In this document: positions 4,962 through 11,628 of the stretch, piece by piece
Layout of the letters: each line of letters begins with the position of its first letter
Numbering within the stretch: position 1 is the first letter of the stretch
IMG/VR virus record: IMGVR_UViG_3300014911_000516
Location: 1-18,608 of that record
DNA length: 18,608 bases
Direction: 5' to 3' (one strand)
Program-made: the position numbers and the translations under genes
The notes under the pieces: generated by a model
Databases searched by the model: none
What the model saw: only the letters and a program-made list of their open reading frames with translations
What the model was told of the DNA's origin: nothing

Positions 4962-5150
4962 TTATGCAATCATCCGTTTATGTCTTGGTTTTATGTAACA
5001 TAAATACCTTCTTATGAGGATGCTTACTGCTCTTCTTATTGCCTCACTTCTAGATTCGTAGCGATTTTGTTTTACTAGGTAATCTATGTCTTCTACGTAT
5101 TTTTCGGGAAGACGTAATGTGATCTTCTTATACTTCACTCTTCTCTTCAT
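4962..5150 (-). CDS. RHH (CopG/Arc/MetJ) transcriptional regulator, 62 aa
   Basis: KITLRLPEKYVEDIDYLV..YESRSEAIRRAV; TATGGTGAA SD. Confidence 0.9.
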   Translation of the reverse strand: MKRRVKYKKITLRLPEKYVEDIDYLVKQNRYESRSEAIRRAVSILIRRYLCYIKPRHKRMIA

Positions 5151-5189: not shown

Positions 5190-5378
5190 TTATGCTATCA
5201 TTTTTTCATATCCATTTCTTTGTCGCCATAACTCCCTATTAATAAGATCACGTACGGCAACCCTTATTGCTTCACTTCTTGATGGGTAAAGTTTCATTTC
5301 GACTAATTTCTCTAAGTATTCTACGTACTTTTCGGGAAGATGTACACTTACTAATCTGAGATTCGATTTCTTACTCAT
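5190..5378 (-). CDS. RHH (CopG/Arc/MetJ) transcriptional regulator, 62 aa (start corrected from 5591 to 5378)
   Basis: MSKKSNLRLVSVHLPEKYVEYLEKLVEMKLYPSRSEAIRVAVRDLI; SD TATGGTGAA before ATG 5378 and a TATA box at 5414-5421. Confidence 0.9.
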   Translation of the reverse strand: MSKKSNLRLVSVHLPEKYVEYLEKLVEMKLYPSRSEAIRVAVRDLINRELWRQRNGYEKMIA

Positions 5379-8352: not shown

Positions 8353-8649
8353 ATGAGTACGGAGAATGAAGTAGAGGAGAAGGTAGATGAAATAGTTGAA
8401 ATATGCTCTAAACTTTTCATGAAGGTGAAAAAGGAGATAGATAAAATATCAGAATGCATCGATGAGATAGAAGATAACGAGATAAAAGTATCGTTTCTAG
8501 GACACATCGTTTACATATTAATGTCACGATCGAAACTCTCACTTCATAACTTACTTGGATTACTAGAAACATTAAAAATTGTAATAGTGTCAAAAGTTGA
8601 GGAAAGCATAAGTACATCCAAAAAATACAGTACTAGCTACTTCGCTTAA
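8353..8649 (+). CDS. Hypothetical helical protein, acidic N-terminus
   Basis: Abuts the FkbM stop; GGTGA SD. Confidence 0.7.
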   Translation: MSTENEVEEKVDEIVEICSKLFMKVKKEIDKISECIDEIEDNEIKVSFLGHIVYILMSRSKLSLHNLLGLLETLKIVIVSKVEESISTSKKYSTSYFA

Positions 8650-8674
8650 AAGAAAATAAAATTTCTAACGTTTT

Positions 8675-9028
8675 TTAGAAGAATTCCGTACTTTCTTCTC
8701 CCCTTCTCCTCCTCCTTCTCCTTAGCCTAGAGTATTCTTCACGAATAGCTGATAACTGGAACATCTCTACTTCAGTTTTAATTGCACTTTCTAGATCCTT
8801 CATTAACTGTGTCACATTAGTGGATAACCCAGCAAGCTGTCTATGTATTGCTATTGAATTTGCAATCTTCTTTAATAATTCACTAAATTCTTCGAAGGAA
8901 ATCTCACCACGTGCAATACTTCGAGCTGCATCACGTAGTATTCCGAACAGCTCAGCTTTTTGTGATGCAAAGTAAGATCCTGAAAGGTATTTATTCAATA
9001 CGTTTAAAATTGGTGAAGGAGTACTCAT
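8675..9028 (-). CDS. Helical protein with a C-terminal poly-Arg tract
   Basis: SRLRRRRRRRGEE; GGAGGTGG/AGGAG upstream; ATGA overlap with 9025..9171. Confidence 0.8.
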   Translation of the reverse strand: MSTPSPILNVLNKYLSGSYFASQKAELFGILRDAARSIARGEISFEEFSELLKKIANSIAIHRQLAGLSTNVTQLMKDLESAIKTEVEMFQLSAIREEYSRLRRRRRRRGEESTEFF

Positions 9029-9171
9029 CTCCTACCCACCTCCACTTTTTCCATCCACTCTGCTATTATCCTCAGCATTACATCTTGAACTTCCATGTTC
9101 ATCTCCTTCGCTACCTGCATCAGCCTCTGATATACTTTGTCTGGAAGTATTATTTCTATCTTTACTGCCAT
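9025..9171 (-). CDS. 48-aa RHH-like protein (MAVKIEIILPDKVYQRLMQVAKEMNMEVQDVMLRIIAEWMEKVEVGRR)
   Basis: Not in the ORF track. GAGGAG SD upstream, CopG-type pattern IEIILPDxxYxRLxxxAxxxxMxVxDVxxxII, and its TGA overlaps the ATG of 8675..9028. Confidence 0.8.
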   Translation of the reverse strand: MAVKIEIILPDKVYQRLMQVAKEMNMEVQDVMLRIIAEWMEKVEVGRR

Positions 9172-9529
9172 CCAAGATCTCCTCAATTAATATAACATCA
9201 TTTGATTTTAATATCTTTCTATCGATTTGCCTGAAGTGATGATATGCACCATCGTGATCGTATGCTGATCTGTATAACTGTTTTCTAAATCTTTCTGCTA
9301 GGTGCTTATCGATCGCAGTAACTGAAAATTCAATAGTTATTCTATATCCTGTAGGTAGTGGATTTATAGATGATGATACTGTAGTGTGAATTCCAGATCT
9401 GATTAATTGTCTAGCAACATAGTAAGCATAGGATACGATAGAAGTCATTCGCTTCTGGATGAGTGCTTGTAACAACTTTATCATTCTCAGATCTGGAAAC
9501 TCTACATCTTGATGAATGTGGATAGGCAT
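9032..9529 (-). CDS. Hypothetical alpha/beta protein; last ~46 codons overlap the 48-aa RHH gene
   Basis: GAGGGG SD; divergent from the MCP operon. Confidence 0.75.
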   Translation of the reverse strand: MPIHIHQDVEFPDLRMIKLLQALIQKRMTSIVSYAYYVARQLIRSGIHTTVSSSINPLPTGYRITIEFSVTAIDKHLAERFRKQLYRSAYDHDGAYHHFRQIDRKILKSNDVILIEEILDGSKDRNNTSRQSISEADAGSEGDEHGSSRCNAEDNSRVDGKSGGG

Positions 9530-9684
9530 CTTCTACCCCCTCATATTTAGTTAGAGTTTACATCACATTATAATAGACTGTTATAGGAGTATATATACAC
9601 TATTCAATATTTTTTTGTATTAATATTTTTACACCATTTCTTAAAACTTGATTTCTTTCTTTCGTTACTCGAGGCGATGGGGAT

Positions 9685-10056
9685 ATGCCTGGTGTTAAAG
9701 ACTTAAGAGAGCGAGTAGATAAGTACATAGCTAAGACACCAGCCGATCAAACTGGTACAAGATACGGGGCTGTTAAGGACTTGGCTGTAGGAAGGTTTAC
9801 AGCGTATGCTTCAAGCATAGTAGAATTCAGAGAACTAGTAAGGAATGTACTAAATAAAGAAGGCGTTCCAGCCGGACAACAGGGAGTTTACTTTGCATTT
9901 GCTATGAGGCTTCGTAGTAAGGCCTTCAGCCACTCTGGTACTACTCTCAAGGATTACGTGAATGGTATGATACAGGACTTCACCACAGGTAAGGGAGCTG
10001 ATCCCACCATACTGAAGAAAATAGCATCCATGATATTAGGAGAGGTGATAAGCTAA
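9685..10056 (+). CDS. Major capsid protein 1, SIRV2 fold
   Basis: VRNVLNKEGVPAGQQGVYFAFA..SGTTL..NG..ADPTILKKI aligns with recalled SIRV2 P134 (VSAVLTQYGITGPNRAIYQGFG..SGPAL..NG..ANPQVLDAV); basic N-terminal helix. Confidence 0.9.
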   Translation: MPGVKDLRERVDKYIAKTPADQTGTRYGAVKDLAVGRFTAYASSIVEFRELVRNVLNKEGVPAGQQGVYFAFAMRLRSKAFSHSGTTLKDYVNGMIQDFTTGKGADPTILKKIASMILGEVIS

Positions 10057-10072
10057 AGGAGGTGAGTGAGAG

Positions 10073-10447
10073 ATGCCCGGAGTTAAAAGATTTGGTGATA
10101 TGAGAGAGAAATACGAGCTAAAATACGATGGTGCAAACGTAACTGCTAGGTTAACGGCCGTAGAGGAGATAAAGAACAGAAGGTATGAAGCATTCTCTTC
10201 ACCAATCGTCAACATAATCGAAACTGTTAGGACGATACTCGAGAGTAATGGCGTCCCAGCTGGTCAGCATGGTATCTACTATGCCTTTGCTGAAGTGATT
10301 CAAAAATACACCTTCAGCCACTCTGGTGCTACCTTAGACTTACTAATATCTGGAAAGAAGAGTGAATGGGTAACTGCCCACAAGGCCGATCCAGCAATCC
10401 TCGACAAGATTGTATTAGCTATAATAGGAGCATTACCACCTTATTAG
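10073..10447 (+). CDS. Major capsid protein 2, SIRV2 fold
   Basis: Gapless paralog of MCP1 (49/123 identities, hand count); SGATLDLLISGKKSEWVTAHKADPAILDKIV matches the rudiviral MCP C-terminus; GGAGGTGA SD. Confidence 0.92.
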   Translation: MPGVKRFGDMREKYELKYDGANVTARLTAVEEIKNRRYEAFSSPIVNIIETVRTILESNGVPAGQHGIYYAFAEVIQKYTFSHSGATLDLLISGKKSEWVTAHKADPAILDKIVLAIIGALPPY

Positions 10448-10581: not shown

Positions 10582-11628
10582 ATGAGTACTGTAATTGTTA
10601 CATCTCATCGATCTACATCTTTGCAAAAAGTGAGTAATGACATTAAAACGGCATTAGAGAGTAATGGAAGAGAAGTAAAGAATATTCTAGGATTTCCAAG
10701 TGTAAGAAGTTCTGATTATGCAAATTGCAGAAACGTGCTCTTCGTAATGACGTTCGATACTATCTGGGCTAGGCCTTACTTCTGTGCTTACTACTTACTA
10801 AAATCAGATGGATGGAACACAATATTCTACACTACTATCGAGGGAAAACCACTAAGATTCCTAGGAGATGAATGGATATATCGTGAATGTGAGTTCATAG
10901 CTAATTCGAATTATACTAAAAAGAAAATCGCTAAAGAAGGTGGTAGGGTTTTAGACGTAATTCATCATGGAATAGATACCCGTAAATACAGGAATTTAAA
11001 GTTTATGGGTAGAATAATGCGAAGTGAACTAGGTGCTTCAGAAAAGGAATTCATCGTTCTTTATATTGCTGGGGGGTATCGAAGAAAAGGACATGATTTA
11101 TTCAGATCTGTCATCCAGTACGTAGGAAAGAAGGATAATACAATTAAATTTGTAGTAGTGACACAGCCTAATGCAATTCAATATTATGCAGATCTAGAGA
11201 ATTGCATTGTTTCAGATGAATTTGGAAATTTACCAGAAGAAAAGATAATAGGATTATTCCATGCATGTGATCTCTATGCTCAGCCCTCTCTAAGCGAGGG
11301 ATTTGGATTACCAGTCTTGGAAGCACTAGCTTGTGGAAAGGTAGTAGTACATCCAGATTATGAGCCTCTCTCAGAGATAACTACAAAGTCTACAAGCTAT
11401 CGATGTAAGGTAGCTACTGTTTCAGAATGGAGTGGTGAGCGAGAAGAACATACTGGAATCATATATGAATTACACCTTTACGATCCAAATGAGTTTGGTG
11501 ATCTCATCATACAAGCTAAAGATGAATTAATGAAAGAGAGAAAAGAAAAGGAGAGATTATGTCTAAATCGTGCTAAACAATTCGATATGCATAAAACATA
11601 TAAGAAGTTCTTAAAGTATATCCAGTAG
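10582..11628 (+). CDS. GT4 (GT-B fold) glycosyltransferase, like SIRV ORF335
   Basis: RKG, PSLSEGFGLPVLEA (EX7E), FYTTxxGxP, NS, HGI, EFG; directly follows the MCP as in rudiviruses. Confidence 0.93.
   Translation: MSTVIVTSHRSTSLQKVSNDIKTALESNGREVKNILGFPSVRSSDYANCRNVLFVMTFDTIWARPYFCAYYLLKSDGWNTIFYTTIEGKPLRFLGDEWIYRECEFIANSNYTKKKIAKEGGRVLDVIHHGIDTRKYRNLKFMGRIMRSELGASEKEFIVLYIAGGYRRKGHDLFRSVIQYVGKKDNTIKFVVVTQPNAIQYYADLENCIVSDEFGNLPEEKIIGLFHACDLYAQPSLSEGFGLPVLEALACGKVVVHPDYEPLSEITTKSTSYRCKVATVSEWSGEREEHTGIIYELHLYDPNEFGDLIIQAKDELMKERKEKERLCLNRAKQFDMHKTYKKFLKYIQ

What the first reader, a model, noticed from the sequence alone, without database searches (positions are those of the whole stretch)
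9025..9171. Hidden 48-aa RHH gene overlapping the tail of the 165-aa ORF in another frame
Seen: the low-complexity-looking C-terminus of 9032..9529 encodes, in a different minus-strand frame, a clean CopG-like RHH. It has its own GAGGAG SD and an ATGA junction with the next gene, giving 140 nt of same-strand overlap that the ORF track misses. Inference: either true dual coding or loss of the upstream gene's stop. It makes a three-gene operon divergent from the MCP promoter and is a candidate regulator of capsid expression.
Basis: partly seen in the sequence, partly recalled or inferred. Interest (0 to 1): 0.6.

Follow-up and report, generated by a model that had tools for sequence, protein, structure and literature searches.

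The report
Hidden regulator gene inside another gene
A small DNA-binding regulator gene that gene finders miss lies in a second reading frame inside the tail of a neighbouring gene of an uncultured filamentous archaeal virus, and nine related viruses keep the same two-frames-in-one-stretch arrangement.

Summary
Window 9171..9025 (-) is a real 48-codon ribbon-helix-helix (RHH) gene. GAGGAG lies 7 nt upstream, and an ATGA junction joins it to the 117-aa gene. It sits in the +1 frame over the last 140 nt of the 165-aa ORF, here called X.

- **RHH identity:** a profile of the ORF and its orthologues hits the solved RHH protein ORF56 of plasmid pRN1 (E 3e-5). An AlphaFold model (pLDDT 90) matches almost only RHH structures (TM mostly 0.75-0.9).
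- **Not an artefact:** three independent assemblies give identical sequence, and no contig shows an indel.
- **Conservation:** nine lineages (GC 36-61%) share MCPs <-> X-RHH-117 synteny. The RHH is always +1 to X and overlaps it by 35-143 nt.
- **Selection:** the RHH frame is under purifying selection (pN/pS 0.3-0.7). The X tail is not conserved in sequence (0.7-3.3). Its frame nevertheless stays open against a chance of about 0.01, and an acidic Gly/Ser-rich tail is found across the family.

This looks like genuine dual coding rather than a recent stop loss. A role in regulating capsid or operon promoters is plausible from position but untested. X and the 117-aa protein have no known relatives.

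The parts
9025..9171 (-). Hidden 48-codon ribbon-helix-helix gene (ATG 9171, TGA 9027-9025). It lies in the +1 frame relative to X.
   Evidence: ORF and junctions. Profile hits to PDB ORF56 of pRN1: E 3e-5 and 6.6e-4. AF2 model pLDDT 90 with helices 11-23 and 28-47. Foldseek top hits are nearly all RHH proteins. Purifying selection in this frame. Orthologues in 8 other lineages.
9179..9184 (-). Shine-Dalgarno-like GAGGAG, 7 nt upstream of the RHH start codon.
   Evidence: Read directly. The same or similar purine-rich motif precedes the RHH start in most of the other lineages and is weak in L023.
9032..9529 (-). Gene X (165 aa). It has a conserved N-terminal domain of unknown fold (about residues 1-119) and a disordered Asp/Glu/Gly/Ser-rich tail.
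   Evidence: Strong purifying selection on the N part, pN 0.10 against pS 0.76. 22 distant homologues. No Pfam or PDB relatives. AF2 model is poor (pLDDT 46) and the tail is unstructured.
9032..9171 (-). Dual-coding stretch of 140 nt: X tail (residues 120-165 plus stop) in frame 0 and RHH codons 1-47 in frame +1.
   Evidence: Both frames are open in window, L005, L013 and L015. Chance of an open X frame is 0.005-0.015. No T-ending RHH codon stands before an AA/AG/GA codon until the X stop.
8675..9028 (-). Third gene of the unit (117 aa, Arg-rich C-terminus, no known family). Its ATG overlaps the RHH stop (ATGA) and follows the X stop by 3 nt.
   Evidence: Homologues of 50-75% identity, always directly downstream of the RHH.
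9530..9684 (.). Divergent intergenic region between X and the first capsid gene. It holds two conserved blocks that are candidate TATA/BRE elements: 9589-9606 for the X-RHH-117 unit and 9636-9647 for the capsid genes. An imperfect palindrome lies at 9616-9633 between them.
   Evidence: Alignment of six lineages. Palindromes. The promoter and operator roles are inferred, not tested.
9685..10447 (+). Two tandem major capsid protein genes (123 and 124 aa), divergent from the unit.
   Evidence: Pfam Sulf_coat_C, E 2.5e-9 and 1.3e-11. 22-25% identity to rudivirus coat proteins.

Best explanation
Window 9171..9025 (-) encodes a genuine 48-residue ribbon-helix-helix DNA-binding protein. Translation starts on its own at ATG 9171 behind a GAGGAG ribosome-binding site. 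The gene is overprinted, in the +1 frame, on the last 140 nt of gene X. X continues through it as a disordered acidic Gly/Ser-rich tail and stops 3 nt before the next gene. X, RHH and the 117-aa gene form one transcription unit that diverges from the two capsid genes. The layout is ancestral to this group of uncultured filamentous archaeal viruses. Selection acts on the amino-acid sequence of the RHH. On X it acts only to keep the frame open and the tail present, not on the tail's sequence.

Shown here: the gene, its fold class, its conservation, the frame-specific selection and the avoidance of stops.

Inferred: the RHH acts as a dimeric transcription regulator, most likely on the shared divergent promoter region (its own unit and/or the capsid genes). 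Ribosomes reading X pass over the RHH start, which would tie the output of the two proteins together.
For: - **Sequence anatomy:**
- **RHH identity:** the profile of orthologues hits PDB 2k9i/3ft7 (ORF56 of pRN1) at E 3e-5. The 8-sequence profile hits it at 6.6e-4, followed by an RHH-type antitoxin (7e4j) and, more weakly, AvtR (4hv0). Pfam RHH_1 scores 20.3 bits against a 20.5 cutoff for the L005 orthologue. PHROG 582, Arc-like repressor, scores E 0.0014. The AF2 model has pLDDT 90.3, and the listed Foldseek matches are nearly all RHH proteins (ORF56, CopG, Arc, PutA, MazE, TacA, ParG, AmrZ; one row not identified) at TM 0.6-0.9, mostly 0.75 or more.
- **Not an error:** the DNA is identical in three assemblies, and four runs show no indels.
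- **Conservation:** nine lineages have RHH in +1 to X with overlaps of 35-143 nt.
- **Selection:** pN/pS for the RHH frame is 0.33-0.74, against 0.72-2.6 for the tail frame, in six pairs. An independent pair gives 0.30 against 3.3.
- **Stop avoidance:** the chance of an open X frame is 0.005-0.015 in the AT-rich clade and 0.008 in L023. Keeping it open under the observed divergence has a chance of 0.2-0.4 per lineage.
- **Tail is family-wide:** X runs 29-62 residues past the last conserved residue in all nine lineages. Most of the 21 distant homologues have D/E/G/S-rich tails.
- **Independent initiation:** a stop codon stands directly before the RHH start in 6 of 9 lineages.
Against: - No expression data exist: none of the five listed runs that hold the sequence is on record as RNA, and there is no proteomics.
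- The window's own 48-mer alone scores below the Pfam thresholds (RHH_5, E 0.039).
- The homodimer prediction gave no verdict.
- The tail frame shows no sequence constraint. Its function rests only on stop avoidance, presence and composition, and the composition is partly forced by the Lys/Glu/Arg-rich RHH codons.
- In GC-rich relatives the open X frame is not surprising by itself (P 0.16-0.8).
- No operator has been identified. The intergenic palindrome is not conserved in the L005 lineage.
Confidence: 0.75

Rival explanations
1. Only the RHH frame matters. The X extension is neutral read-through: ribosomes make the tail, but it has no function, and the open frame is an accident of a stop lost long ago.
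For: Tail-frame pN/pS is about 1 or higher. The tail is predicted to be disordered. Its length and stop position vary among lineages, with overlaps of 35-143 nt. Its composition follows partly from RHH codons read one base out of register.
Against: The X frame is open at P of about 0.01 in two separate clades and is kept in four diverged lineages of the AT-rich clade. None of nine lineages has X ending before the RHH start. A tail of 29-62 residues is always present, also where most of it lies outside the overlap. Most distant homologues have acidic tails.
Confidence: 0.25
2. A programmed +1 ribosomal frameshift fuses the X N-domain to the RHH, so the RHH is a C-terminal domain of an X-RHH fusion and not a separate protein.
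For: The +1 frame relation is constant in all nine lineages. The RHH starts right after the conserved X domain.
Against: A stop codon in the RHH frame stands immediately before the ATG/GTG in 6 of 9 lineages, and 5 codons before it in the window. Every lineage has a start codon, and most have a purine-rich ribosome-binding motif. No slippery or conserved shift site is seen, and Rfam finds nothing.
Confidence: 0.04
3. The RHH frame is a chance ORF, or the overlap is an assembly or indel artefact, and the 165-aa protein is the only product.
For: Gene callers did not call the 48-mer on this contig. The window's 48-mer alone is below the Pfam cutoffs.
Against: The sequence is identical in three independent assemblies and no run shows an indel. 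The ORF is conserved in nine lineages down to about 25% identity, with purifying selection. There are profile hits to solved RHH proteins and a confident RHH model. Gene callers did call the orthologue where the overlap is short (47 aa in L021, 39 aa in L024).
Confidence: 0.02

Closest known systems
ORF56 of Sulfolobus plasmid pRN1 (CopG-like copy-control protein; PDB 2K9I, 3FT7)
   Same: It is the best sequence and structure match: E 3e-5 over residues 4-42, and TM 0.81 at 28-31% identity. It has the same size and the same strand-helix-helix layout.
   Different: ORF56 is a plasmid gene upstream of a replication gene (own knowledge). I know of no overprinting on another gene for it. The match to the NCBIfam ORF56 model is far below its cutoff (16 against 50 bits).
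SvtR of rudivirus SIRV1 and AvtR of lipothrixvirus AFV6 (RHH transcription regulators of filamentous archaeal viruses)
   Same: They are small RHH proteins of filamentous archaeal viruses that control viral promoters, including structural genes (own knowledge; review PMC5569661 turned up but not read). AvtR (4hv0) appears as a weak profile hit at E 0.06.
   Different: There is no significant sequence relation. To my knowledge those genes stand alone and are not embedded in another reading frame. The targets here are unknown.
Rz/Rz1 of phage lambda and the nested genes of phiX174 (overprinted genes)
   Same: One gene lies in the +1 frame inside another on the same strand, and both are translated (own knowledge). 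It is the same kind of genome economy.
   Different: The proteins are unrelated (spanins, lysis and scaffold proteins). Here the embedded gene is a DNA-binding regulator, and the host frame is a low-complexity tail that is conserved only as an open frame.
CopG/Arc/MetJ superfamily (Pfam RHH_1, RHH_5)
   Same: The fold is the same, and so is the pattern of alternating hydrophobic and polar residues in the N-terminal strand followed by Pro (KIEIILP).
   Different: Scores sit at or below the Pfam gathering cutoffs. The usual Gly-x-Ser/Thr/Asn turn is replaced by Asn/Lys-x-Glu/Thr/Ser in most members.

Membership tests
Ribbon-helix-helix (CopG/Arc/MetJ) superfamily | A domain of about 45 residues with an N-terminal strand followed by two helices | tested here: met
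   AF2 model at pLDDT 90.3: residues 1-10 extended, helices 11-23 and 28-47. The listed Foldseek matches are nearly all RHH proteins, at TM 0.6-0.9 (mostly 0.75 or more) and probability 0.57-1.0 (most 0.85 or more). E-values are weak (0.08 or more) because the domain is so short.
Ribbon-helix-helix (CopG/Arc/MetJ) superfamily | Significant sequence-profile similarity to known RHH proteins | tested here: met
   Profile against PDB: ORF56 of pRN1 at E 3e-5. With the 8-sequence profile: ORF56 at 6.6e-4 and an RHH-type antitoxin (7e4j) at 1.7e-3.
Pfam RHH_1 (PF01402) / RHH_5 (PF07878) | Score at or above the curated gathering cutoff | tested here: not met
   Window 48-mer: RHH_5 at 14.1 bits against a cutoff of 26. 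L005 orthologue: RHH_1 at 20.3 against 20.5. L019 orthologue: FitA-like RHH at 18.8 against 27. Membership of the superfamily is supported, but not membership of a curated Pfam family.
Ribbon-helix-helix (CopG/Arc/MetJ) superfamily | Obligate homodimer that forms the two-stranded DNA-reading ribbon | tested here: inconclusive
   The complex-prediction run with two copies scored 0.33 against a mark of 0.42, against 0.00 for the controls. The tool's verdict was 'no answer'.
Ribbon-helix-helix (CopG/Arc/MetJ) superfamily | Gly-x-Ser/Thr/Asn turn at the start of helix 2 | tested here: inconclusive
   The alignment shows the classical G-M-S only in L018. The window has N-M-E, and the others have N-x-T or K-x-S/T. 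Asn/Lys stand in place of Gly, as in ORF56 (K-N-L-T).
Ribbon-helix-helix (CopG/Arc/MetJ) superfamily | Sequence-specific binding to repeated operator half-sites | not testable with these tools
   There is only a candidate: an imperfect palindrome at 9616-9633 between the two conserved promoter blocks. It is not conserved in the L005 lineage.
Overprinted (dual-coding) gene pair | Both frames stay open across diverged relatives beyond chance, with selection detectable in at least one frame | tested here: met
   Nine lineages were compared. The chance of an open X frame is 0.005-0.015 (AT-rich clade) and 0.008 (L023). The RHH frame has pN/pS of 0.3-0.7.
Overprinted (dual-coding) gene pair | Both products are actually made | not testable with these tools
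   None of the five listed runs that hold the stretch is on record as RNA, and no proteomic data are available.

The most novel reading that the evidence does not exclude
The X tail / RHH overlap is an ancient translational switch conserved across the family. Ribosomes reading X to the end of its acidic tail run over the RHH ribosome-binding site and start codon, and in the AT-rich clade and L023 they terminate at the start of the 117-aa gene. This would set a fixed ratio of X, regulator and downstream protein. The acidic tail itself might act on the basic DNA-binding RHH encoded by the same nucleotides. The replacement of ATG by ATT at the X start in some lineages would then tune this balance.
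Probability: 0.15. Interest if true: 0.7.

Novelty: new variant of a known kind. Interest (0 to 1): 0.5.

Why it matters
Small RHH proteins are the main transcription regulators of archaeal viruses. Here one is invisible to standard gene calling in most members of a virus group, because it lies inside another ORF. This shows that regulator inventories of metagenomic archaeal viruses are incomplete.

It also gives a clean natural example in a double-stranded DNA archaeal virus of long (up to 143 nt) same-strand dual coding, conserved over deep divergence. One frame keeps its sequence and the other keeps only its openness. Such cases are useful for calibrating overlapping-gene detectors.

Finally, it points to the X-RHH-117 unit next to the capsid genes as a conserved module that is wholly uncharacterised and worth expressing.

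Tried and rejected
- **Searches with no result.**
  - Phage/virus collection with DNA of the region, with X and with P0012.
  - Four IMG/VR scans with X, the 117-aa protein and their alignments: no true relatives. L002-L004 are 32-residue chance matches.
  - Word-based protein search with the 48-mer. That is expected if callers miss the gene.
  - ESM Atlas feature search for X and for the 117-aa protein: no usable hit.
  - Pfam, PHROG, NCBIfam and PDB profile searches for X and for the 117-aa protein: nothing meaningful.
  - Rfam on the whole window.
- **Truncated contigs:** the metagenome scan gave L011 and L012, which end inside the X N-domain and say nothing on the overlap.
- **Poor model:** the AF2 model of X has pLDDT 46, so no fold search was run on it.
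- **No verdict:** Complex prediction on the RHH homodimer scored 0.33 against a mark of 0.42. This is neither support nor evidence against.
- **No paralogy:** hhalign of the RHH profile against the window's other RHH_1 protein (5190-5378) gave probability 1.5%, so the 48-mer is not a recent paralogue.
- **Rejected start:** the TTG at 9186 (the 53-aa ORF) is rejected as the start, because L005 and L013 have an in-frame TAG right before their GTG.
- **Rejected coupling idea:** the idea that X must stop at the 117-aa start for coupling cannot be general. In L019, L020, L021, L024 and L026 X stops 37-109 nt earlier.
- **Virus family not assigned:** two papers describe two-MCP filamentous families from vents (Ahmunviridae, 'Samediviridae'), but no sequence comparison with them was possible.

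Full report
**1. What is in the sequence**

On the minus strand an ATG at 9171 opens a 48-codon frame, MAVKIEIILPDKVYQRLMQVAKEMNMEVQDVMLRIIAEWMEKVEVGRR, which ends in TGA at 9027-9025.

- GAGGAG lies at 9184-9179, 7 nt upstream of the ATG.
- The TGA shares the tetranucleotide ATGA with the start of the 117-aa gene (9028..8675).
- The 165-aa ORF 9529..9032, here called X, reads the same DNA one base earlier. The 48-codon frame is therefore +1 to X, and the two overlap by 140 nt.
- X stops at TAG 9034-9032, 3 nt before the 117-aa start.
- Other same-strand overlaps in the window are 10 nt or less.

**2. Context**

The window is an 18.6-kb IMG/VR contig from a JGI metagenome. A 30.3-kb ENA contig (L007) and a Logan contig (L009) carry the identical region.

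The two genes divergent from X (9685-10056 and 10073-10447) are paralogous capsid proteins of the filamentous archaeal virus type. Pfam Sulf_coat_C gives E 2.5e-9 and 1.3e-11, and identity to rudivirus coat proteins is 22-25%. Runs that hold the DNA are labelled sediment, seawater and hydrothermal vent metagenomes. Two-MCP filamentous families from such sites have been described. I could not test whether this virus belongs to one of them.

**3. Not an artefact**

Three assemblies from different pipelines agree base for base over 9600-8660. Contigs of four public runs laid on 8600-9700 show no insertion or deletion. A minor variant contig over 9043-9193 has 18 substitutions and no gaps.

**4. 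Is the 48-mer an RHH?**

| Test | Result |
|---|---|
| Window 48-mer alone, Pfam RHH_5 | E 0.039, below cutoff |
| Window 48-mer alone, PHROG 582 (Arc-like repressor) | E 0.0014 |
| Window 48-mer alone, NCBIfam ORF56 | E 0.009 |
| L005 orthologue, Pfam RHH_1 | 20.3 bits against a 20.5 cutoff |
| Two-sequence profile against PDB | ORF56 of pRN1 (2k9i/3ft7), E 3e-5, residues 4-42 |
| Eight-sequence profile against PDB | ORF56 6.6e-4; RHH-type antitoxin 7e4j 1.7e-3; AvtR 0.06 |
| AlphaFold2 on the eight-sequence alignment | pLDDT 90.3; extended 1-10, helices 11-23 and 28-47 |
| Foldseek against PDB | listed matches nearly all RHH proteins (ORF56, CopG, Arc, PutA, MazE, TacA, ParG, AmrZ); TM 0.6-0.9, mostly 0.75 or more |

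The Foldseek E-values are weak, as expected for 48 residues. The homodimer prediction gave no verdict. I accept membership of the RHH superfamily. Membership of a curated Pfam family is not met at threshold.

**5. Relatives**

The word search found X homologues and 117-aa homologues, and their contigs were fetched. The exhaustive profile search with X found 22 proteins down to about 20% identity, and contigs of six of them were fetched.

Nine lineages cover the junction. Their contig GC ranges from 0.36 to 0.61.

| Locus | Overlap of RHH with X (nt) |
|---|---|
| L013 | 143 |
| window | 140 |
| L005 | 140 |
| L023 | about 132 (135 as counted from the GTA); RHH lies wholly inside X |
| L019 | 113 |
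| L020 | 86 |
| L026 | 86 |
| L024 | 74 |
| L021 | 35 |

- In every lineage the order is X, then a 43-49-codon RHH ORF, then a 117-like gene. Wherever the contig reaches that far, the capsid genes lie divergently upstream.
- The RHH is always +1 to X.
- Gene callers found the RHH only where the overlap is short: 47 aa in L021 and 39 aa in L024.
- A tenth, partial lineage (L016-L018) shows the RHH C-terminus directly upstream of its 116-aa gene. A tail-like frame there closes 37 nt before that gene's start.

**6. Which frame is selected?**

Between window, L005, L013 and L015, the RHH frame has pN/pS of 0.33-0.74 in all six pairs. The X-tail frame has 0.72-2.6. An independent pair, L020 against L024, gives 0.30 against 3.3. 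For L023 against L026 the two frames do not separate within the overlap (0.76 against 0.79), and pN/pS over the whole RHH is 0.49. The X N-domain is strongly constrained, with pN 0.10 against pS 0.76. So the amino-acid sequence of the RHH is under selection and that of the tail is not.

**7. Is the tail still meaningful?**

Four points argue that it is.

- **Stop avoidance.** With the RHH protein held fixed and codons drawn from the virus's own usage, the X frame stays open in 0.5-1.5% of trials for the three AT-rich lineages and in 0.8% for L023. In the GC-richer lineages the figure is 16-80%. None of 4096 46-codon windows in the window's genes is open in that offset. The mechanism is visible in the sequence: no RHH codon that precedes an AA-, AG- or GA-starting codon ends in T until the GGT-AGG pair that forms the X stop.
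- **Retention.** Random substitution at the observed level, with the RHH frame kept open, preserves the X frame in only 19-42% of trials per pair. Yet all four AT-rich lineages kept it.
- **Presence.** In all nine lineages X extends 29-62 residues beyond its last conserved residue (R104 in the window). The RHH start lies 7-24 codons after that residue, so X never ends before the RHH begins.
- **Composition.** Most of the 21 distant homologues carry a tail rich in Asp, Glu, Gly and Ser. D+E+G+S is 0.48-0.68 in the last 25 residues, against about 0.25 in the body.

One caveat applies. Lys/Glu/Arg-rich RHH codons read one base early give Gly, Glu and Arg, so part of the composition is forced by the overlap.

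**8. How the RHH is made**

A stop codon in the RHH frame stands directly before the ATG or GTG in six of the nine lineages. In the window it stands five codons before. An X-RHH fusion by frameshifting upstream of the start is therefore excluded in those lineages. Most lineages also have a purine-rich motif 5-10 nt upstream. Independent initiation is the simplest reading. The conserved X motif (Ile/Leu/Val)-Asp-Val/Gly is the same DNA as stop-Met-Ser/Ala of the RHH, a small piece of true dual constraint.

**9. Likely function (inferred)**

By analogy with SvtR, AvtR and CopG-type repressors (own knowledge), the RHH should bind as a dimer to repeats in promoter DNA. The 155-bp divergent region has two blocks conserved in six lineages. 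They are TGAATAGTGTATATATA(C) at 9589-9606 and GTTTTAAGAAAT at 9636-9647, placed as TATA/BRE elements for the X unit and for the capsid genes. An imperfect palindrome lies between them at 9616-9633. It is not conserved in the L005 lineage, whose RHH strand residues also differ. No target is shown. X and the 117-aa protein match no known family.

**10. Verdict**

The hidden gene is real and the overlap is genuine and ancient.

RHH regulators of archaeal viruses and overprinted viral genes are both known kinds. The combination appears to be undescribed: the regulator is conserved inside the open but sequence-free tail of a neighbouring gene across a whole group of uncultured viruses. Two full-text searches turned up nothing that reports it. 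Only two of the papers were opened, by term look-up.

Noticed in passing
L005:2297-2299; also L011 and L012 at the aligned position (window equivalent 9529-9527): In two lineages the X start codon ATG is replaced by ATT. No other in-frame start follows the upstream stop. The 27 codons that follow are conserved with mostly synonymous changes, so X seems to start at ATT there, or to be made at a much lower level.
   Followed up: partly
window 4962-5150 (-) and 5190-5378 (-): Two further tandem 62-aa RHH_1 genes (Pfam E 5e-8 and 9e-10). They are not close paralogues of the hidden 48-mer (hhalign probability 1.5%). The virus therefore carries at least three RHH proteins.
   Followed up: partly
L024:1-1992 (-) and L025:1-1992 (-): The glycosyltransferase next to the capsid genes is 786 aa or more in this relative, against 348 aa in the window (10582-11628). 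It carries intein-splicing and LAGLIDADG hits, so it looks like an intein inserted in a viral glycosyltransferase.
   Followed up: no
L005:2921-2975; L006 3' end; loose ends: Several public contigs of relatives end in the Nextera adapter sequence. The adapter was translated into the ends of database proteins, for example the last six residues of P0003 and the end of the 55-aa ORF in L005.
   Followed up: no
window 8675-8730 (-): The 117-aa protein ends in a run of seven Arg followed by GEESTEFF. The Arg-rich C-terminus is conserved in homologues of 50-75% identity. The protein matches no family.
   Followed up: partly
window 8648-8662: A T-rich tract (on the minus strand) lies right after the 117-aa gene, where that gene converges with the plus-strand 98-aa gene. 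It is a candidate oligo-T terminator of the unit.
   Followed up: no
L007 (ENA contig of 30,270 bp): A longer contig carries the whole window region, with identical sequence around the finding. The genome is therefore at least 30 kb, and the window is a fragment of it.
   Followed up: no
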